Source: Asterias rubens
Taxonomy: Eukaryota
Assembly (NCBI RefSeq): GCF_902459465.1
Contig: NC_047074.1
Location: 2,542,001 to 2,606,000, forward strand
DNA length: 64,000 nucleotides
Direction of reading: 5' to 3'
The notes below the pieces were generated by a model that worked only from the letters and a program-made list of their open reading frames with translations, was not told the DNA's origin and ran no database searches. Shown here one piece after another: positions 140 to 61,390 of this stretch. The number at the start of each line of letters is the position of its first letter. Within the stretch, counting starts at the first letter, position 1. The translations under genes and the position numbers were made by a program.

Positions 140-3100
140 CTATTTCTCGGACTGCTCTTGCTGGTCATCTGAAAGAGTTTGAATATGTGAGGCAGGTATC
201 CCACTCTTTGAATTTCCCTTGCTGAATACTTTTGTTGCCCAAACTTGCTTTGAGAAGCGTTTGAGGGGGCCTGGATGTTTGGAATCCACCTCACATTCAC
301 CAACAGAAGCCCCTTGGACACCGAACCTCAAGGTGTCTTTTGGTGGTCGCAAAACAAGTGGGTCTTCTGTGTGGCCGTTTACTTTAACAGCGCCAACCAC
401 TTCTCCCTCGGAAGTCTGTCCAGGTTTTTCTGTAGTTTGCTTTGAGGCAAGTGGATCTGACTGGCCCTCTTCAGTGGCTCTCTCGACCAGCACTTTCTCG
501 CCAGACTGCCCGTGGTTAGGAACAGTATTCCTATCCTTATGATTTCCCCAGCCAAACATTTTTGTGGCAGAAATCTTCCCTCGAAGGCTTGAGCGAGTTT
601 TTGGAATAGCCTGACTTTGAGAATCAAGATTTTCTCTACCAGGAACCTCCTCCGCTTCTGAAATTTGCGGTGCAGTTTGAGGACCTCTGTCTTTCCTGAT
701 ATTGACTGTACCGACCACTTCTCCCTTGACAGCCTGCTCTTGTTTGTCTGTAGTTGGCTTTGAGGTTAGTGTATCTATCTGGCTCTCTACATTGCCTTTA
801 TCAACATCCACTTTCTCACCAGTCTGCCCATGGTTAGGAGCATTCCTATCCTTAGAATGTACCCATCCAAACACTTTTGTACCAGAAATCTTCCCTCGAA
901 GGCTTGAGCGAGTCTTCGTGAACGCCTGACTAGGGGAATCAATTTCAGGAACTTCCTGCTCTGATTCTGAATTTTGTTGTAAAGTTTGAGGGCCTCTGTC
1001 GATGTCAATACTGACTGTACCAGCCACCTCTTGCTTGAAAGTCTGTTCTGCCTTGTCTGTAGTAGGGTTCGAGTCAAGTGTATCTGTCTCAACAACTACG
1101 TTCTCTCCAGTTTGCCTATGTTTGGAAACAGTATTCTTACCCTCATGATTTCCCCAAACGAACATTTTTGTCAACAAAATCTTCCCTCGAAGGCTAGTGC
1201 GAGTCTTTGGGGATGCCCGACTCAGAGAATCATTTCCATCTCTAACAGGAACCTCTTCCGATTCTAAACTATTCTGTGAAGTTTGAGGACCTCTGTTGGT
1301 CTCAATATTGACTGTACCGACCACTTTACCCTCAACAGTCTGCCCTGGTTTGGCTGTAGTTGACTTTGAGTCAAGTGGATCTGTCTCCCCCTTAACATCA
1401 CCATTATCAACAACTACTTTTTCTCCAGTTTGCCCATGATTAGCTGTCTCAACCATAACTCTCTCGCCAGCTTGCTCATCTCTAGAAACAGTTGTTTTAC
1501 CTTTTGGATTTACCCAACCAAACATTTTTGTTGCAGATATCTTGCCTGGAAGACTTGTGAGAGCCTTTTTGAGTGTTTGTCGTTTAGAATCCAGCTCATC
1601 TCTACCTGAACTTTCCTCCTCCACAATCTGCCCAGGGTTGTCAAAAACATGCTGCGAGGTCTGAGGAATTCCGTGGGTCTCAACATTACCTGCTTGAATG
1701 TCTTTTCCCTTGTCGGTCTTCCCTTGTTCATCTGCAAGAGTTTGCATGGCAAGAAGGTCCCCTGTCGGGTTCTGAACAACTCCTGAACCATCTACTCCCT
1801 TCTCGTCAGTCAACTCTTGACTTGCAAGGTTCGGAGAAGCTTTTCGACCTTGAGAACTTACCCACCCAACCATTCTTGTCGAAGAAACCCATCCTGCCAG
1901 ACCTTTGTGAGTCTTTCCAAGCGTCTGATGTTCAGAATCAAGGTCAACCGACTGTCCTGTTTGGTTTGCAAGTTGCTTTGAGGTTGGTGAATCTGTGTGA
2001 ACCTCAACACGGCCAAACACATCCTTCTCGTCAGTTGGCTCTGCCGTTTTCTTTGAGGTACTTGGATCCGTTTGCCCCTGAATACTGACGGTCTTATCCA
2101 CACCCTTCTCGTCAATCTGCTCTTGGCTGTCAAGGCTCAAAGAGTTTCTTTTATCATGTACCCACCCAACCATCTGCCCAGGAAAACCTACAAAAGTCTT
2201 AACAAGTGGCCATTTCTTTGAACCGACTTCATCCATACCACCCATACCCTGCTCACCCGTATGTCCTGGTAGGTTCACAAGTTGCTGTGAGGTTTGTGGA
2301 TCTGTCTGGCCCTCGACAATGCCAGCTCCAACCATTTTCAAGTTGTAATTTTCTTGTGGTTTGTCAACTTCAGTTGACTTTGAGTCACTTGATTCCATTT
2401 GCTCCTGCACATGGTTTGTCTCATCGACAGACTCGCTGTCAGTCTGCTCTGTCTTGTGGAGGCTCAAAGTACTTCCTGTAACCTTAGAACTTACCCAGCC
2501 AGCCATCCTTGTAGCATAAATATGTCCTAGAAGACCTTTACGAGTATGTTCGAGTATCTGATTTTCAGAATCAATGTCATCCACACCAACATCAACCCCA
2601 GCCCCTTGTTCATCTGTGACTGACTGCGAGACATGTGGATCAGTATGACCATCATGACCTTTTGCCACTCCATGAACTGTCTGCCCTAGGTTTGCACCTT
2701 CCTGTGAGGTTTGTGAATCTGTCTGGCCCTCGACATTTCCACCAGGTCCAACCATTTCCCAATTCTCATTTTGCTGTGATTTGTCAGCCTTACCAACCAC
2801 TTCACTCTCAAGAGTACGCTCTGGGCCATCTATGGCCATCTGTCTCATCAAGGTTGGCCTCCTTGCTGTAAAGCTGACCCTTCCTACCATCCTCCACATC
2901 CAATTTAGCTCTGGGGTGCTTACAGGTGTCTGACCTTTTGAATTATCCCTATCTCTACCAACCTCTAGCTCCTCTTCAGGATGGTAAGGGTATTCAGTTG
3001 GCATCTCTCTTCCGATTTGAGATTCCTCTAAATCTATATCAACTTCTGTGCTATCTAAATCAGTGTAATCATAGTCGAGTGAGGTCTGGAGCGGCATTTG

Positions 3101-3409
3101 TCGGTGTGTTTGTTTGGGTGTCTGATTGGGCGTGTGTCTGGGTGTTTGATTGGGCGTGTGTCTGGGTGTTTGATTGGGCGTTGAATTGGGTGTTTGACTA
3201 AGCGATTGTCTGGGTGTTTGATTGGGCGTTTGTCTGGGTGTTTGATTGGGCGTTTGCCTGGGCGTATGCCTCGTACGCAATCTTCTAGTCACCTGTGAAT
3301 CCACGATAGACTGTATGGCTTGGAGAACTTCCGGGGGAGATATCTGCTCCAGTCGTCTCTTCAGTTTACGGAATGTGTACATGTTGTCATTGTAGTAGTT
3401 GAACTTGCA
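140..3409 (-). CDS. FYVE gene terminal exon (~1090 codons, low-complexity repetitive tail)
   Basis: Acceptor gataacag| 27 nt upstream of the ORF-track ATG at 3382 (adds CKFNYYNDN); open to TAG at 142-140. Confidence 0.9.
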   Translation of the reverse strand, partial: CKFNYYNDNMYTFRKLKRRLEQISPPEVLQAIQSIVDSQVTRRLRTRHTPRQTPNQTPRQTPNQTPRQSLSQTPNSTPNQTPRHTPNQTPRHTPNQTPKQTHRQMPLQTSLDYDYTDLDSTEVDIDLEESQIGREMPTEYPYHPEEELEVGRDRDNSKGQTPVSTPELNWMWRMVGRVSFTARRPTLMRQMAIDGPERTLESEVVGKADKSQQNENWEMVGPGGNVEGQTDSQTSQEGANLGQTVHGVAKGHDGHTDPHVSQSVTDEQGAGVDVGVDDIDSENQILEHTRKGLLGHIYATRMAGWVSSKVTGSTLSLHKTEQTDSESVDETNHVQEQMESSDSKSTEVDKPQENYNLKMVGAGIVEGQTDPQTSQQLVNLPGHTGEQGMGGMDEVGSKKWPLVKTFVGFPGQMVGWVHDKRNSLSLDSQEQIDEKGVDKTVSIQGQTDPSTSKKTAEPTDEKDVFGRVEVHTDSPTSKQLANQTGQSVDLDSEHQTLGKTHKGLAGWVSSTRMVGWVSSQGRKASPNLASQELTDEKGVDGSGVVQNPTGDLLAMQTLADEQGKTDKGKDIQAGNVETHGIPQTSQHVFDNPGQIVEEESSGRDELDSKRQTLKKALTSLPGKISATKMFGWVNPKGKTTVSRDEQAGERVMVETANHGQTGEKVVVDNGDVKGETDPLDSKSTTAKPGQTVEGKVVGTVNIETNRGPQTSQNSLESEEVPVRDGNDSLSRASPKTRTSLRGKILLTKMFVWGNHEGKNTVSKHRQTGENVVVETDTLDSNPTTDKAEQTFKQEVAGTVSIDIDRGPQTLQQNSESEQEVPEIDSPSQAFTKTRSSLRGKISGTKVFGWVHSKDRNAPNHGQTGEKVDVDKGNVESQIDTLTSKPTTDKQEQAVKGEVVGTVNIRKDRGPQTAPQISEAEEVPGRENLDSQSQAIPKTRSSLRGKISATKMFGWGNHKDRNTVPNHGQSGEKVLVERATEEGQSDPLASKQTTEKPGQTSEGEVVGAVKVNGHTEDPLVLRPPKDTLRFGVQGASVGECEVDSKHPGPLKRFSKQVWATKVFSKGNSKSGIPASHIQTLSDDQQEQSEK

Positions 3410-19559: not shown

Positions 19560-19842
19560 CAGGCAGTGGACACAATTGGTTATATTTCTCAAAATAATTA
19601 TTAGCATACAAGTTACTTGTGAGAAACGGCTCCCTCTGAAGTAACGTAATTTTCGAGAAAGAAGTAATTTTCCACTAAGTTGATTTCGAGACCTCAGAAT
19701 TATATTTTGAGGTCTCGAAATCAAGCATCTGCATGAAAGCACACAACTTCGTGTGACAAGGTTGTTTTTTCTTTCATTATAAGCTTGTCCTAACTCGAGG
19801 TAAGACGAGTCCTAACTATTTGTGAACTCAACCCCAGTGTCT
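19560..19842. mobile_element. Kolobok-like MITE, internally deleted, with the remnant of a nested Harbinger-like MITE (about 19785-19834)
   Basis: Left aggcagtggacacaattgg; right ..gtcctaactcgag..gtcctaactatttgtgaactcaaccc|CAG|tgtct|TTAA. Confidence 0.7.
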
Positions 19843-20194
19843 TTAAGGACGATCAACACATAAGTCGCTTTAATTTTCTTTCCGAAGATGTTTCTATTTT
19901 GCTGTTGAAACTTTGTACCTTAGACGGTTTGAAGATTTTTGTGTAATATCCTTTCTTGTAATTGGCGGCTCGTCCGCTTTTGGTTTGGCTAAATATATTA
20001 TGTCATGAAATATCCTTGATTGGCAACACTGTTTGTATTAGTCGCCAGTAGAGGGCTCCTCGGAGGCTTACTCGGAATGACTGGGCCAGTCTACGAATCT
20101 GGATCGTTCGATTTGATCCAGATGTTTGTGTGATACAGACATCTGTTCTCCAGTAATTCGTCTTGTGGACAGTATTCGCGTGTTGTGATATCAT

Positions 20195-26127: not shown

Positions 26128-27249
26128 TTATCTTCCACATCGCAGAAGTTTCACTAACCCCTTTCGGTAATGTCTATACTGGAGACCATAGATAAACGGG
26201 TTGACGCAAGAGTTCAACTGTGCAGCAAGGATAGCAAAATTGATGAAGGAACTGAAGAAGTCAAGGCTCCCGCCCAGATTGTACTGCAGGAACGCCCATT
26301 GGTCAGGCGACCAGCAGATGACGTAAAAGACATACACAGTGAACAGTGTTTTGGTCACGTTTTTGCGTTGGATGTTTCCGGACGATTTGGTGCCTTTGGT
26401 GTTCGCAGGCTGAGTGCTGGAACCTGGCTGGCTGGTGTCACCCGCTGTTACTAGGGAGGCGCCATCTTGACCAGTCGAGTTGGTACTGATGACGTTTGCT
26501 CCTTGCGTTGCACGCTGTGGTGGTGGTTGGTTTGCAACTTTGATGTTCTGCTGCCGGAATCTGAGGAATATCTTGACGAAGGAAAACGTCATGATGATCA
26601 TTGGGATGAAGTAATCCCACAGAAAAACCAAGATGCCGAAGATCTTCTCCATTGCACTGGTGTAGAGTGCGGCCTCATAGGTGCAAGATGCCGGTACGGT
26701 TTCTGGTATGAAGTCGTATCTCAACACCGCAATGATGAACTGCCAAAATGGCCCGACTAGCCAGGGTATAATTGGCAATGTTTTGGCGATGGTGGTGTTT
26801 GCGAATTTCCTGGAGTAGTAAATAGGATGAATGACGGCTAGATAGCGTTCCACTGATATCTCAGTCAGGTTGAACGTGGACGCCGCATACGCAGCGAACA
26901 GACAGAATCTTGAAGACCAGAACTTACAGAAAATCTGCCCGAAGAAGTAGTTTTCAGGAGGAGATACTTCAGCGAGTTCCGTAATGGTCAGGCCCACGAG
27001 GAGGATTGAAGCACATAAGTCAATCAGAGCTTGATTGGCGATCAGGGTATTGGTCGTGTTGCGTTTATTGGTGCTCCACAGGCGCGCCACCACGATGCAA
27101 ACTAACAGGTTACCAATGATTCCGGACACTCCAATACAGAGTCGAATGGCTATTAGAAGCAACTGATTTGGTGCAAAAGACGTATTAAGTTCTTCATCAC
27201 CGCTAGCAGTCGTGGCGATGTCGGTCCAAGCTGTGTCATTCAACGCCAT
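26128..27249 (-). CDS. Intronless class-A (rhodopsin-like) GPCR, galanin/allatostatin-A-receptor-like, ~373 aa
   Basis: Seven hydrophobic segments, GN in TM1, ALxD in TM2, ERY, CWSP, NPFIY, and N-terminal sequons (NDT, NTS). Probable start MALNDT at 27249. The subfamily label is from general resemblance only. Confidence 0.93.
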   Translation of the reverse strand: MALNDTAWTDIATTASGDEELNTSFAPNQLLLIAIRLCIGVSGIIGNLLVCIVVARLWSTNKRNTTNTLIANQALIDLCASILLVGLTITELAEVSPPENYFFGQIFCKFWSSRFCLFAAYAASTFNLTEISVERYLAVIHPIYYSRKFANTTIAKTLPIIPWLVGPFWQFIIAVLRYDFIPETVPASCTYEAALYTSAMEKIFGILVFLWDYFIPMIIMTFSFVKIFLRFRQQNIKVANQPPPQRATQGANVISTNSTGQDGASLVTAGDTSQPGSSTQPANTKGTKSSGNIQRKNVTKTLFTVYVFYVICWSPDQWAFLQYNLGGSLDFFSSFINFAILAAQLNSCVNPFIYGLQYRHYRKGLVKLLRCGR

Positions 27250-27724
27250 GATCTTTAGTATCTTTTGTGCAACGCTGATGGCCGAGTTCAGTTGAATGAT
27301 TTCAACACAGGAATCGGATAATGCAAAGATGATCACAAAAGCAAAACCCTGGCTGCCGTAAGAGAAATGATATCTCGTAACAAGATTTAAAGTTGCAGTT
27401 CCTTTCCAACTCCAGTTAGCGCACTGTAACAAAGTTGGCTTGATTTTGGGTTTGTTTTCCGTGGATATAAAGTAAAGATCAACCGTCTAAATGGATAGCA
27501 GTGAGCTCCCCACACAAAGATCTTGTCAGAATCTGGAAGTAGGACGAGTTGTCTTCTCTATGACGAGATGCAGATTGTAAGATACCAAGTTCACCCGCAA
27601 GAGCATTTGAAGCTACTGCGAGATAAAGTTGTTCGTGGACTTACATAATATACAAACTGTCCGAGCACAGGTTTGGGTGAAGTTTATACACACCCAATAC
27701 AGACGTGTGGTAGGTCTACACAGC

Positions 27725-47361: not shown

Positions 47362-47783
47362 AGGAATCAGGTACTTTTTCAAAATGTCCACAGATATACA
47401 TTAAACTTAAAGGGTTTGAAGATAATGATAGTGGAAAGCTTCCCTTCAAATATTACAAACTAAGGTTGTGTAGTTTTTGAGAAATGAGTAAAGGAAGTCA
47501 CAAAATAATGTTTGTCTCATGAGCCCAAAATTATTTTAGCATGTAAAATCCCCTTAACCAGTTATGATATTATACCAAAACCATAGGATAACTGGTTAAT
47601 ACGTTTTTACATGCTAAAACTGAGACGAAAATTATTACTTTTACTCATTTCTCAAAAACTACAGCACCTCAGTAAGTAAAATTTCAAGGGAAGCTTTCTA
47701 TTATCATAATCTTCAAACTGTGTAAGTTTAATGTAAATCTGTGGACATTGTGTTTTTTGTTAGGAAAAAAGTACATATACCCT
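47362..47783. mobile_element. Intact Kolobok-like MITE, family AGGAATCAGGTACTTTTT
   Basis: TTAA|aggaatcaggtactttttc ... gaaaaaagtacatataccct|TTAA. Confidence 0.85.
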
Positions 47784-47787
47784 TTAA

Positions 47788-48268
47788 AGGCACTGTCGTC
47801 GATTTCACCAAACTCTTCCTAACTTAGGATTAATCTTAAGACTTAGTTACTCGTCCTAACTCGAGATAGGATTAATCCTAGCGTTTCGTGAAATCGGCTG
47901 CAGGACACCTTTGGTAATTACCAAAGACCAGTCTTCTCACTGTGTGTATCTCAACATGCATAAAATAACAAACCTGTAAAAATTTGAACTAAATTGTTGT
48001 CGTCCAAGTTGCGAGAGAATAATGGAAGGAAAAACACCCTTGTCGCACAAGTTATGTGCTTTCATTCAGAGTCTTGAACCTCGACTGAGGTCTCGAATTC
48101 AATTCAAATATTTTAATGAGAAAATACTTCTTTCTCAAAAACTACGTTACTTCAGAGAGAGCAGTTTCTCACAATGTTTTATACTATCAACAGCTCTCCA
48201 TCGCTCGTTACCAAGTGACATTTTATCCTAAAACATATTCCGTTAATTACCAAACGTGCCCAGTGCCT
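47788..48268. mobile_element. Kolobok-like MITE with a Harbinger-like MITE in its TIR
   Basis: TTAA|aggcaCTG[insert]CAGgacacctttggtaatt ... aattaccaaacgtgcccagtgcct. Confidence 0.85.
47796..47900. mobile_element. 105-bp Harbinger-like MITE (CWG TSD)
   Basis: 13-bp imperfect TIR tcgtcgatttcac / gtgaaatcggctg flanked by CTG and CAG; a shorter version of 60026-60196. Confidence 0.75.
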
Positions 48269-48709
48269 TTCAGATTCATGCTCCTCGCTCCCACATGCTT
48301 CCTCGTCCCCGGGCCAATTTACATCCGAAGCTCCTTAAGGTCCCACGTCAAACAATTCGGAGGTAAACAACCTCTCATACAATCTTGACTTATTGGTTTT
48401 TCTTGGAGAAGGGGGTTTTCATCCCGAGGGAGGACTGTCGAGAATAAAAATAAAGGAAGAAATCGAAGTTAGGATTTAGGCACAGTTTGAGATCAGTTTG
48501 GTGACATATCTGGGATAAGCAAACCTTCTCGACAATCAATCAAACACGGAAATAGATTCAAAATCGCATCTCAAAGTTTGAAGGTTCAAACCATAGAATG
48601 GTTCAACAGAGTTTGTACACTGCAAAAACTGGGCTAAATTTAAACACCATGGGAGTTAAAATTTATGATTTATTTTAAACCAATTACATTGGTGTTATTT
48701 TAATACCCT

Positions 48710-54829: not shown

Positions 54830-55987
54830 ATGGAGCCCAACATCACCACTTTGAGTTTTTCGAACACTTCGCTCGCTACCATGACCCCAAGTGTGGAATT
54901 GTTCAAACAAGGTGAGATCCTGCTACCAATTATTCGTGGTACCTTTGGTGGGATCGGAATAATTGGTAACCTGTTAGTTTGCATCGTGGTGGCGCGCCTG
55001 TGGAGCACCAATAAACGCAACACGACCAATACCCTGATCGCAAATCAAGCTCTGATTGACTTATGTGCTTCGATCCTCCTTGTGGGCCTGACCATTACGG
55101 AACTCGCTGAAGTATCTCCTCCTGAAAACTACTTCTTCGGGCAGATTTTCTGTAAGTTCTGGTCTTCAAGATTCTGTCTATTCGCAGCGTTTGCGGCGTC
55201 CACGTTCAACCTGACTGAGATATCAATGGAACGCTATCTAGCCGTCATTCATCCTATTTATTACTCCATGAAATTCGCAAACACAACCATCGCTAAAATA
55301 TTGCCAATGATACCATGGCTACTTGGACCTTTGATGCAGTTCGTCGTTGCGATGTTGAGATACGATTTCATTCCGGAAACCACGCCGAAATCTTGCACAT
55401 ATGAGTCCAAACGCTACACCGATGCAATGGAGAAGATCTTTGGCATCATGGTTTTCCTTTGGGACTACTGCATCCCAGTGTCCATCATGACGTTCGCCTT
55501 CGTCAAAATAGTCATCAAATTCAAGCAGCAGAATTTGAAAGTTGCTTTGAGGCAGCCACTCCGCCCGCCCCAAGGGTCAACTGTCCCAACGATCTCCACT
55601 ATGAAAGCTCATCACAACTCGGTCACCGAAGTCGACCCACAAATCATGAATGCTGAAAACTCCTTAGCAGCGGCCGAAATAAACGAGCCGAGTTCCAGCA
55701 ATCAGCCAGCGCGCACCCAAGGCCAAAAATCGTCCAGCAACATCCAACGCAAAAATGTGACCAAAACACTATTTATTGTGTATGTCGTTTACGTCATTTG
55801 CTGGTCGCCCGACCAATGGGCGTTTCTTCAGTACAACCTTGGAGGGGAGCTTGATTTTGGGAGTACCTTCACTAACTTTGCCATTCTCATTGCTCAGTTG
55901 AACTCCTGTGTTAATCCGTTTATCTACGGTCTCCAATACAGACAGTACAGACAGGGTTTAATCAAACTGTTTAAGTGTCAACGATAA
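54830..55987 (+). CDS. Intronless class-A GPCR, paralog of 26128-27249, ~385 aa
   Basis: Same motifs (GN, ALIDL, ERY, CWSP, NPFIY). Probable start MEPNITT at 54830 with NIT/NTS sequons; AATAAA near 56058. Confidence 0.93.
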   Translation: MEPNITTLSFSNTSLATMTPSVELFKQGEILLPIIRGTFGGIGIIGNLLVCIVVARLWSTNKRNTTNTLIANQALIDLCASILLVGLTITELAEVSPPENYFFGQIFCKFWSSRFCLFAAFAASTFNLTEISMERYLAVIHPIYYSMKFANTTIAKILPMIPWLLGPLMQFVVAMLRYDFIPETTPKSCTYESKRYTDAMEKIFGIMVFLWDYCIPVSIMTFAFVKIVIKFKQQNLKVALRQPLRPPQGSTVPTISTMKAHHNSVTEVDPQIMNAENSLAAAEINEPSSSNQPARTQGQKSSSNIQRKNVTKTLFIVYVVYVICWSPDQWAFLQYNLGGELDFGSTFTNFAILIAQLNSCVNPFIYGLQYRQYRQGLIKLFKCQR

Positions 55988-56661: not shown

Positions 56662-57028
56662 AGGGAGGGACACGTTTGGTAATTACTCAAAACAAATTTT
56701 AACTTGGTATACTGACTTGGTAACGAGCATTGGAGAGCTGTTGATAGTATAAAACATTGTGGAAAACGACTCCCTCTGAAGTAACGTAGTTTTTTAGAAA
56801 GAGGTTATTTCTCACTAAAACATTAAAGACTTCTAGCCAGAAGTCTTTTAGTGCTATCTGAAAGCACACAAATTCGCCCAACCAGGGTGTTTTTTCTTTC
56901 ATTATTATATTGCAACTTCGATTACCAGTTGCGCTCAAATTTCCACAGTCTTGTTGTTTTATGCATATGTTGAGATACACCAAGTGAGAACACTGGTCTT
57001 TGACAATTACCAATAGTGTCCAGTCTCT
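56662..57028. mobile_element. Kolobok-like MITE
   Basis: TTAA|agggagggacacgtttggtaatt ... aattaccaatagtgtccagtctct|TTAA. Confidence 0.85.
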
Positions 57029-59733: not shown

Positions 59734-60204
59734 AGGCACTGTACACTATTGGTAAAACTCAAAATAATAGTTACTATAAAAACGTACTTGGTCACGAGCA
59801 GCAGTGGAGAGCTGTTGATATAATATAAAACATTGTGAGAAACGGCTCCCTCTGAAGTAACTTAACTTTCTCACTAAAATATTTGAATTGAATTCGAGGT
59901 CTCAAATTCAAGGCATCTGAAGGTAAACAACTTCTGCGACAAGGGGCCGGTGTTTTTTCTTCCATCATTCTATGTTGGGACCAAGTGAGAAGACTGGTCT
60001 TTGACAATTACCAAAAGGTGACCAGCCGTCGATTTCACCAAACTCTTCATAACTTAGGATTAATCATAGGACTATAGGACAGGTTCAGTTCCGTATCCAA
60101 ATACGTAGGACGCATTGAACTTATCCCAAGTTAGGACGGGTTACTCGTCCTAACTCGAGATAAGATTGATCCTATAGCGTTTCGTGAAATTGACTGCTGT
60201 GCAT
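59734..60204. mobile_element. Kolobok-like MITE with a Harbinger-like MITE in its TIR
   Basis: aggcactgtacactattgg ... aattaccaaaaggtgacCAG[insert]CTGtgcat|TTAA. Confidence 0.85.
60026..60196. mobile_element. 171-bp Harbinger-like MITE (CWG TSD)
   Basis: TIR ccgtcgatttcac / gtgaaattgactg flanked by CAG and CTG. Confidence 0.75.
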
Positions 60205-61390
60205 TTAAAGGGCCTTGTCACAAGTGACAAGTTTTACAGGCAACTTATGGGCCTGCAGTGGTATATGGAATAACTTTGGTGACACACGAGTAACTTTGCA
60301 AACAGTGTATTATGATCCCAATAAAAACATGGGACCTTTTGTTTGCTTACAGTGATTTAAAACACGATGAAAAACGAAAATCAGGCTATGCAATTAAAAC
60401 TGCATTAGGCCTATTGAATGACGAGTTCTGGAAATATTGTCGGAAACTGTTGAGGCGGACGTGTTGAATAGATCCCATCACAAAAAGGTTTTTGATTGCT
60501 TAATACAATAATGAGGCCGTAAGTTCACTGTGAGTCAGAGTGATGATGGATTAGATTCTGTAAAATTGAAATGTGCAAATACTGTTTCGGGGGATTCGAT
60601 GAAAGGATCTCTCTCACATTGTTATGAGCCGTGATAAATAGCGAATTATAGCTTGACAACATCACTTATAATGTGACGGATACCGATTGCTTGTTTTTCA
60701 GTCAGCCGTTTAATGCAAACATTATTGAGTGGGTTTGCTATTGAAGTAGTTCTACTGAATGTCATCATAAAGACATTTGACACGTGCTCGGGGTGACGAG
60801 AGTGGTTTGGAAACAATCGCTTGTGGCAACAATCTGTCAGTTATACTCACTTGTTCTCTCTTAGTCTACATGGCGAGAAAATCCATCTTTTAACACTTAT
60901 ATGACATTTCCATGGAAACATAAGTTTTCACCTTTTGAACGGGCAATTAGTGACGGCGATAGGTTGAAATTGTTTGAAAACAATTCTGTTTTTTTTTTAA
61001 CTTTCGGTTTTTGGAACTGTTCGACTGTTTTAATCGTATATTACCATTTCCTTTTACAACAGGCAGCACTAGTTTGCTTTACTAAGCCGGGGTCATTGCA
61101 TTGTCTCTAGTACATGGATAGTGAAAAAAAAAACAGCGAAATTATACTTTTATTTGTACCTTAATTGGCATCAGACTAATAAAAAACAAAACAGGTTTTA
61201 ACAATAGTTTGCATACGACATGTTGACCATCGATACATCACCTACAGACGTTGTGTATGTGGGTGTGGGGGAAATTGCCAATGAGACTATTAAAACATCA
61301 TTGAGCATGTTTGACGAGCAAAACTTGAGAACATTGAGCCATAAAAAAGGTATACAAAGACGTGCATCTCTTCCTCTTTAGAAACTAAAA

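What the first reader, a model, noticed from the sequence alone, without database searches (positions are those of the whole stretch)
47784..47903. A Harbinger-like MITE repeatedly hits the same trinucleotide inside a Kolobok MITE terminal repeat (site 1 of 3)
Seen: reading inward from the host TTAA, three loci share the layout TTAA + 5 nt + CWG + insert. They are 47784 (TTAA AGGCA CTG[105 bp]CAG gacacc), 60208 on the minus strand (TTAA ATGCA CAG[171 bp]CTG gtcacc) and 19846 on the minus strand (TTAA AGACA CTG[remnant]). Sites 1 and 2 are in the same host end (next to tgtcaaagaccagt); at site 3 that subterminal sequence is deleted, but the host orientation places the insert at the same end. 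The insert orientation relative to the host is opposite at sites 1 and 2, and the site 3 insert is a different subfamily, which argues for independent events rather than one composite being copied. Three of the four recognisable termini of this family in the window lie at this position. Known: PIF/Harbinger elements make 3-bp TSDs (TWA, CWG in some lineages) and some have extended target preferences. Inference: a target-specific transposon that parasitises, and probably immobilises, another abundant transposon by splitting its TIR. Only host variants with CACTGG (not CAGTGG) offer the site.
Basis: partly seen in the sequence, partly recalled or inferred. Interest (0 to 1): 0.75.

Follow-up and report, generated by a model that had tools for sequence, protein, structure and literature searches.

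The report
Small transposon repeatedly lands in another's end
In the starfish Asterias rubens, three old copies of a small CWG-targeting (Harbinger/NuwaI-type) transposon sit at exactly the same three bases in the terminal repeat of an abundant TTAA-type transposon, but the family also inserts at ordinary CWG sites, so this is a recurrent landing spot and not a dedicated parasite of the other element.

Summary
At 47796-47900 (+), 60026-60196 (-) and 19781-19834 (-, remnant), a short TIR element lies directly after TTAA + 5 nt + CWG of an abundant TTAA-flanked, Kolobok-like MITE. All three insertions are also present at the orthologous sites in Asterias amurensis, so they predate the species split. 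They look like three independent events. They belong to three subfamilies, sites 1 and 2 have opposite orientations, the three hosts are not a clade, and insert 1 is much younger than its host copy.

The family is a CWG-duplicating Harbinger/NuwaI-type MITE. I examined 20 complete copies. The canonical element is 167 bp with 13-bp TIRs, and there is a C-CWG-G target bias.

The "target-specific parasite" reading is only partly supported. In 213 kb of Asterias DNA, 6 of 9 copies lie elsewhere, and about 25 suitable host ends are empty. All 18 copies found in transcripts of a related sea star are at ordinary CWG sites. Under the family's general target motif, the host site ranks at the 94th-97th percentile of CWG sites. 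So it is a good and very abundant target, that is, a hotspot.

The scan noted the same pattern in two other windows of this genome (unchecked).

One side observation: the two TSD copies often differ at the middle base (7 of 20).

The parts
47796..47900 (+). Site 1 insert: subfamily A CWG-type MITE, 105 bp. It carries a 62-bp internal deletion relative to the 167-bp orthologous copy in A. amurensis.
   Evidence: 98% identical to the 167-bp family consensus over the retained part. The A. amurensis orthologue is L090 2788-2954.
47793..47795 (+). Left TSD copy of site 1 (CTG). This equals positions 6-8 of the host TIR.
   Evidence: host consensus AGGCA-CTG-GACAC.
47901..47903 (+). Right TSD copy of site 1 (CAG). 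Its middle base differs from the left copy. A. amurensis shows the same state.
47788..48268 (+). Host Kolobok-like MITE copy 1. End A is split by the insert. It is flanked by TTAA (47784-47787) and a degenerate TTCA (48269-48272).
   Evidence: 80% identical to the host consensus.
60026..60196 (-). Site 2 insert: subfamily B MITE, 171 bp, in the opposite orientation relative to its host compared with site 1.
   Evidence: 77% identical to the subfamily A consensus and 82% to the solo copy at L117 232-392.
60197..60199 (-). TTAA-proximal TSD copy of site 2. It reads CAG on the minus strand and deviates from the host's CTG at the middle base.
60023..60025 (-). Inner TSD copy of site 2. It reads CTG on the minus strand, as in the host consensus.
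59734..60204 (-). Host Kolobok-like MITE copy 2. End A, next to the TTAA at 60205-60208, is split by the insert.
   Evidence: 85% identical to the host consensus.
19781..19834 (-). Site 3 insert remnant: subfamily C (terminus GGGTTGAGTTCAC), truncated and joined to the host interior.
   Evidence: A complete subfamily C copy with CTG/CTG TSDs lies at L118 25764-25891.
19835..19837 (-). Surviving TSD copy of site 3 (CTG on the minus strand), at host TIR positions 6-8.
19561..19842 (-). Host Kolobok-like MITE copy 3. The subterminal part of end A was lost together with the inner half of the insert. TTAA lies at 19843-19846.
   Evidence: 93% identical to the host consensus, in the young core clade.

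Best explanation
The insert belongs to a family of non-autonomous cut-and-paste transposons of the PIF/Harbinger-related NuwaI type. The family has 13-bp TIRs (CCGTCGATTTCAC / CAGCCGATTTCAC; subfamily C has GGGTCGATTTCAC), a canonical length of 167 bp, and a 3-bp CWG target duplication. Its transposase, not identified here, prefers CWG sites with a loose palindromic context: C at -1, G at +1, A/T at +/-2, and A at -6 / T at +6. This is the same type of motif as the Harbinger3_DR target AAACAC-CWG-GTCTTT.

End A of one subfamily of a very abundant TTAA-flanked, Kolobok-like MITE reads TTAA-AGGCA-CTG-GACAC. That is a better-than-average match to the motif (top 3-6% of CWG sites), and it occurs once every few kilobases. 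Three different subfamilies therefore each landed once on this same trinucleotide within this 64-kb stretch. All three events happened before A. rubens and A. amurensis diverged.

The position is a recurrent hotspot created by general target preference multiplied by target abundance, possibly with some extra local preference. It is not a dedicated target, and most copies of the family are elsewhere.

Shown here: the anatomy, the TSD, the shared orthology, the independence of the events, and the existence of solo copies. Inferred: the transposase type, and that the target motif explains the hotspot.
For: - The window is A. rubens chromosome LR699104.1.
- All three nested inserts are present at orthologous sites in A. 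amurensis.
- Eighteen further copies in JACSEG/JACSEB contigs show the canonical 167-bp element with CWG on both sides (10 of 15 perfect) and diverse flanks.
- The target logo has C at -1 in 17 of 28 and A at -6 in 16 of 28.
- A PWM built from those sites places the host TIR site at the 94th-97th percentile of 4500 Asterias CWG sites. It predicts that only about 1% of insertions fall in the 12 strictly defined free host sites, or about 2.5% when scaled to all ~28 host sites.
- Solo copies exist in Asterias at L111 5386-5561, L117 232-392 and ~11195, and L118 14424-14548, 25764-25891 and 26958-27100.
- 25 host CACTGG ends are free.
- The events are independent. The three hosts are not a clade, and host 1 is 80% identical to its consensus while its insert is 93-98% identical to its own. 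The three inserts have different termini and subfamilies. Orientation is opposite at sites 1 and 2.
- Literature: NuwaI elements have CWG TSDs (PMC4482050). Harbinger3_DR has the target AAACACCWGGTCTTT (PMC3016246). MITEs nested in MITEs by independent insertions are known (PMC5172404).
Against: - Three of three in one window is still far above what the motif model predicts (about 1-2.5% per insertion). Even allowing for the number of windows read, P(>=3) is about 0.04-0.3 windows expected in 783 for nested fractions of 2.5-5%. Some extra attraction of this site is therefore likely.
- The PWM rests on only 14 loci, and these come from transcripts of another species.
- The host site has A, not the preferred C, at -1.
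- The unbiased Asterias sample is small (6 copies in about 150 kb).
- No autonomous element was found.
Confidence: 0.65

Rival explanations
1. One reading: the Harbinger-like MITE is a target-specific element that recognises the Kolobok-like TIR itself, beyond a generic CWG motif. It thereby parasitises the host family and disables it by splitting its TIR.
For: - All three copies in the window are at the identical trinucleotide, come from three subfamilies and occur in both orientations.
- The odds ratio is about 135 against other CWG sites in 213 kb.
- The excess exceeds the motif-weighted expectation.
- Two other first-stage notes on this genome describe the same thing (unchecked).
Against: - 6 of 9 Asterias copies and 18 of 18 transcript copies are elsewhere.
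- 0 of 18 suitable host ends outside the flagged window are occupied.
- Host copies 1 and 2 were already old (80-85% identical to consensus) when hit, so nothing needed immobilising.
- The window was selected because it shows the pattern.
Confidence: 0.15
2. One or two original nested insertions were copied as composites, either through mobilisation of host plus insert by the Kolobok transposase or through segmental duplication. The repeated position would then be inherited and not re-targeted.
For: - Sites 2 and 3 have the same orientation relative to the host.
- Hosts 1 and 2 both fall in the older, diverged part of the host tree.
Against: - Insert termini and internal sequence differ between all three. 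Insert 1 is 77% identical to insert 2, and site 3 has the GGGT terminus.
- Orientation is opposite at sites 1 and 2.
- Host 3 sits in the young core clade, away from hosts 1 and 2.
- Insert 1 is much younger than host 1.
- Flanking DNA is unrelated, and each composite has its own TTAA flanks.
Confidence: 0.05
3. A pure chance cluster: the family inserts according to its generic motif only, and this window is the extreme tail among the many windows read.
For: - Outside this window none of 6 copies is nested.
- With a nested fraction of 2.5-5%, a few windows with two hits are expected among 783.
Against: - The expected number of windows with three hits is only 0.04-0.3 in 783.
- P is about 2e-7 for this window under uniform CWG use.
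- Two further windows were flagged.
Confidence: 0.15

Closest known systems
NuwaI group of the PHIS (PIF/Harbinger-ISL2EU-Spy) superfamily (Han et al. 2015, PMC4482050)
   Same: The TSD is 3 bp and reads CWG. The TIRs are short (13 bp, within the reported 12-61 bp range). Subfamily C starts with GGG, as most NuwaI TIRs do. The host is an animal.
   Different: Only non-autonomous copies were seen, and no DDE transposase or Myb/SANT ORF was found here. Subfamilies A and B start with CCG/CAG, not GGG. Echinoderms are not among the 16 species listed in that paper.
Harbinger3_DR of zebrafish (target AAACACCWGGTCTTT; cited in PMC3016246)
   Same: CWG is duplicated. The target context is loosely palindromic, with C at -1, G at +1, A/T at +/-2 and A at -6 / T at +6.
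   Different: The preference here is much weaker than 'highly specialised'. I had no Harbinger3_DR sequence to compare TIRs. The recurrent target here happens to lie in another transposon's TIR.
Nested MITE multimers in maize and rice (Jiang and Wessler 2001, as summarised in PMC5172404)
   Same: MITEs are found inside other MITEs through independent insertion events. Tourist-type (PIF/Harbinger) elements are among the insert families.
   Different: Here the same trinucleotide of the host TIR is hit by three subfamilies, in an echinoderm, and the host belongs to a TTAA-type (Kolobok-like) family.
T2-MITE / Kolobok non-autonomous elements of Xenopus (PMC6004289), as the closest known relative of the host element
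   Same: The host has a TTAA target duplication, a terminal AGG..., a size of about 380 bp and a very high copy number.
   Different: The terminus is AGGCA, not AGGRR. No Kolobok transposase partner was examined, so the superfamily assignment remains an inference.

Membership tests
NuwaI / PIF-Harbinger-type MITE (insert) | 3-bp target site duplication reading CWG | tested here: met
   Of 20 complete copies, 12 have identical CWG on both sides, 7 differ only at the middle base, and 1 differs at an outer base. Uninterrupted host copies serve as paralogous empty sites with a single CTG.
NuwaI / PIF-Harbinger-type MITE (insert) | Terminal inverted repeats of 12-61 bp, usually starting with GGG | tested here: inconclusive
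   A 13-bp TIR is present in all subfamilies. The GGG start occurs only in subfamily C (site 3; L118 25764; L117 ~11195). Subfamilies A and B start with CCG/CAG.
NuwaI / PIF-Harbinger-type MITE (insert) | An autonomous partner encoding a DDE transposase plus a Myb/SANT protein, with matching TIRs | not tested
Harbinger3_DR-like target selection | Palindromic extended target around CWG (AAACAC-CWG-GTCTTT) | tested here: inconclusive
   A symmetrised logo from 14 loci shows C at -1 (61%), A/T at -2, and A at -6 (57%). The direction is the same, but the preference is much weaker.
Kolobok superfamily non-autonomous element (host) | TTAA target duplication and an AG/RR terminus | tested here: met
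   Most intact ends are preceded by TTAA and start with AGGCA or AGACA. The criteria come from PMC6004289.
Kolobok superfamily non-autonomous element (host) | Mobilised by a Kolobok transposase with matching TIRs | not tested
   No autonomous element was examined.
Site-specific (target-dedicated) transposon | The large majority of copies occupy the one target sequence | tested here: not met
   3 of 9 Asterias copies and 0 of 18 transcript copies are in the host TIR, and 25 suitable host ends are empty.

The most novel reading that the evidence does not exclude
The two 'duplicated' CWG triplets flanking these elements are often not true duplicates. In 7 of 20 complete copies they differ at the middle base only. 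This includes sites 1 and 2, where the host consensus shows which copy is the deviant one, and where the state is shared by two species.

This is what one would expect under three conditions: (a) the excised element keeps 3-nt single-stranded overhangs from the donor's TSD, as proposed for mPing; (b) these overhangs pair with the new CWG target without gap synthesis, in the manner of piggyBac; (c) a W:W mismatch is left behind and resolves to the donor's base on one side. Mismatched TSDs would then be a natural record of the donor flank and of the integration chemistry of CWG-type Harbinger relatives.
Probability: 0.3. Interest if true: 0.6.

Novelty: new member of a known kind. Interest (0 to 1): 0.35.

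Why it matters
The finding shows how a generic target motif combined with a hugely abundant repeat can produce what looks like site-specific 'transposon-on-transposon' parasitism, and it gives a way to separate the two quantitatively. It documents CWG-duplicating (NuwaI/Harbinger3-like) MITEs in asteriid sea stars, with copies in mRNA untranslated regions. If the middle-base TSD mismatches hold up genome-wide, they would give in-genome evidence on how PIF/Harbinger-type transposases join element ends to target DNA, a step that has hardly been studied.

Tried and rejected
No read-based census or empty-site test was possible.
- Scans of viral contigs with a degenerate TIR pattern gave only chance hits. 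The host pattern gave nothing there. The genome-contig scan gave nothing.
- I first took the JACSEG/JACSEB contigs as genomic DNA of a species lacking the host MITE. Pfam hits to intronless full-length animal genes and exon-wise alignment to the A. amurensis TIMP gene show they are spliced transcripts. The absence of host MITEs there therefore says nothing about that genome.
- An attempt to get an orthologous empty site for the L097 copy in A. amurensis failed, because the UTR is too diverged. The same attempt for the L111 solo copy failed because the region is rearranged between the species.
- I considered and rejected alternative junction models (no TSD, a 1-bp TSD, or CWG belonging to the element). 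None of them reproduces the uninterrupted host sequence AGGCA-CTG-GACAC together with the mostly direct CWG repeats of the 20 copies.
- The apparent shared CACC-TTTGG change in hosts 1 and 2 is not a shared derived character. A. amurensis keeps the canonical CACTATTGG at site 1.
- No autonomous Harbinger/NuwaI element could be sought, for lack of a seed sequence. A paper search for the JACSEG accession found nothing.

Full report
**Source and anatomy.** The window is Asterias rubens chromosome LR699104.1. It contains about 17 copies of a ~380-bp MITE. These copies are flanked by TTAA and end in AGGCA(C/G)TGGACACTATTGGTAATT. This fits the Kolobok/T2-MITE criteria of a TTAA target and an AG/AGG terminus (PMC6004289). 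No transposase partner was examined.

- Site 1: TTAA 47784-47787, AGGCA, CTG 47793-47795, insert 47796-47900, CAG 47901-47903, then the host continues.
- Site 2, minus strand: TTAA 60208-60205, ATGCA, CAG 60199-60197, insert 60196-60026, CTG 60025-60023, then the host continues.
- Site 3, minus strand: TTAA 19846-19843, AGACA, CTG 19837-19835, then a 54-bp remnant fused to the host interior.

BLAST finds no other copy of the insert family in the window.

**Age.** Orthologous loci of A. amurensis were fetched through the two GPCR genes of the window. They are collinear with the window at 90-95% identity. All three nested inserts are present there at the same positions with the same flanking triplets. 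At site 1 A. amurensis has the full 167-bp element, and the A. rubens copy has lost 62 bp internally. The insertions therefore predate the split of the two species.

**What the insert is.** A scan of metagenome contigs for a 21-mer of the terminus returned 18 true copies in JACSEG/JACSEB records (L103 is a chance hit). These define the canonical element:
- 167 bp long
- left end CCGTCGATTTCAC and right end GTGAAATCGGCTG
- copies 96-99% identical to their consensus
- flanked by CWG on both sides (10 of 15 identical)

This is the signature of the NuwaI group of PIF/Harbinger relatives (CWG TSD, PMC4482050), to which Harbinger3_DR-like elements correspond in behaviour (target AAACACCWGGTCTTT, PMC3016246).

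The symmetrised target logo shows C at -1, G at +1, A/T at +/-2 and A at -6 / T at +6. That is the same kind of motif, but weak.

The JACSEG contigs turned out to be spliced transcripts of a related asteriid, for two reasons.
- They carry intronless full-length ORFs for GABP-alpha/Ets, TIMP, a BAR-domain protein and a thioesterase.
- The TIMP is 90% identical to the A. amurensis protein, and its contig aligns exon by exon to the A. amurensis gene.

These 18 copies are therefore UTR copies. The absence of the host MITE in those contigs is not informative about that genome.

**Independence of the three events.**
- Inserts 1 and 2 point the same way on the window strand while their hosts are on opposite strands.
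- Insert 1 belongs to the young subfamily A (93-98% identical to the consensus). Insert 2 is only 77% identical to that consensus and groups with a solo copy in L117 (82%). Insert 3 has a different terminus (GGGTYGA...CACAAA), shared with L117 ~11195 and with a complete copy at L118 25764-25891.
- In a tree of 23 host copies the three hosts are not a clade. Host 3 lies in the young core, and hosts 1 and 2 lie apart in the older part.
- Host 1 is 80% identical to the host consensus, far more diverged than its insert. The insert therefore arrived long after that host copy was deposited.
- An apparent shared change in hosts 1 and 2 (CACC-TTTGG) is absent from the A. amurensis orthologue of site 1.

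Amplification of a single composite is therefore very unlikely.

**How specific is the target?** I collected a further 150 kb or so of Asterias DNA around unrelated genes. It contains six more copies of the family, none of them in a host TIR:
- L111 5386-5561
- L117 232-392
- L117 ~11195
- L118 14424-14548 (inside a host body, but not in its TIR)
- L118 25764-25891
- L118 26958-27100

These are documented.

In the 213 kb of non-redundant Asterias sequence there are 5640 CWG sites. About 25 host ends offering CACTGG are free and 3 are occupied. That gives an odds ratio of about 135 (P = 6e-6). This figure is inflated, because the window was chosen for showing the pattern. Outside the window the count is 0 of 18 host ends and 0 of 6 copies.

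A PWM built only from the transcript copies puts the host site at the 94th-97th percentile of Asterias CWG sites. It predicts that about 1% of insertions fall in the 12 strictly defined free host sites, or about 2.5% when scaled to all ~28 host sites.

With about 2.7 copies per window, nested fractions of 2.5-5% predict 2-7 windows with two hits and 0.04-0.3 windows with three hits among the 783 windows annotated so far. The scan's own notes list two further windows with this pattern (unchecked).

Taken together, the site is a real hotspot. It is used perhaps 5-20 times more often than an average CWG site. The family's general motif and the sheer abundance of the host TIR explain much of this. 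It is not a dedicated target.

In the host consensus, end A reads CACTGG and end B reads CAGTGG, which has no CWG in that register.

The "immobilisation" idea has no support. Few host ends are occupied, and the hosts at sites 1 and 2 were already old when hit.

**Side observation on the TSD.** The flanking triplets at sites 1 and 2 are CTG/CAG and CAG/CTG. The solo copy in L111 is CTG/CAG. L100 and L108 are CAG/CTG. L093 and L097 are CGG/CAG.

Over 20 complete copies there are 7 middle-base mismatches against a single outer-base mismatch (P = 0.003 if all positions mutate alike). The five A/T mismatches are far more than point mutation predicts (expected 0.2-1.3).

At both nested sites the host consensus identifies the deviant copy, and it lies next to the same element end (GTGAAATYGRCTG).

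A published model for mPing has staggered cleavage within the TSDs at excision (PMC4561436). That model leaves 3-nt overhangs on the excised element (PMC11254759). If those overhangs pair with the new target, a W:W mismatch would arise whenever the donor and target middle bases differ. This would explain the pattern. It is an inference from 20 copies. L100 and L106 are the same locus differing at exactly this base, and L108 carries an internal partial duplication, so the count is soft.

**Limits.**
- The look-up caps limited the unbiased Asterias sample to six copies.
- No autonomous element was sought, for lack of a seed.

Noticed in passing
window 47793-47795 / 47901-47903; 60197-60199 / 60023-60025; L111 5383-5564; L093, L097, L100, L108: The two CWG triplets flanking one element often differ at the middle base only (7 of 20 complete copies, against 1 outer-base mismatch). 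This may be a trace of donor-TSD overhangs carried by the excised element.
   Followed up: partly
window 47362-47783: A 422-bp TTAA-flanked MITE (ends AGGAATCAGGTAC... / ...GTACATATACCCT) is present in A. rubens but absent from the A. amurensis orthologue. It is inserted into the very TTAA that flanks host copy 1. This indicates TTAA-type MITE activity after the species split.
   Followed up: partly
window 47846/47847 versus L090 2839-2900: The A. rubens site 1 insert has a 62-bp internal deletion relative to the orthologous 167-bp A. amurensis copy.
   Followed up: yes
L091-L109 (JACSEG/JACSEB records): Contigs filed as metagenome are spliced mRNAs of an asteriid sea star (TIMP 90% identical to A. 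amurensis). They carry the MITE in untranslated regions, so the family is frequently exonised or transcribed.
   Followed up: partly
window 26128-27432 (-) and 54830-55987 (+): Two inverted rhodopsin-type GPCR paralogues are about 75% identical overall. They share an identical stretch of about 80 residues (TM1 to TM3 region) in their translations, which agrees with the gene-conversion note made on this window.
   Followed up: no
window 140-3382 (-): A 1080-codon open frame encodes a low-complexity, repeat-rich protein (TPNQTPRQ repeats, then ~100-residue repeats) with no Pfam match.
   Followed up: no
L108 2622-2909 (-): A MITE copy with a partial head-to-tail internal duplication. The first ~117 bp are joined at a TCG microhomology to position 7 of a full copy.
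   Followed up: partly
window 56699-57013 (-): A 104-codon open frame runs through almost a whole host MITE copy. Such frames could be miscalled as genes in automatic annotation.
   Followed up: no
L118 14230-14548: A subfamily-C-like element sits about 190 bp inside a host MITE whose end A (CACCGG) is intact. This shows that host bodies are also hit away from the TIR.
   Followed up: partly
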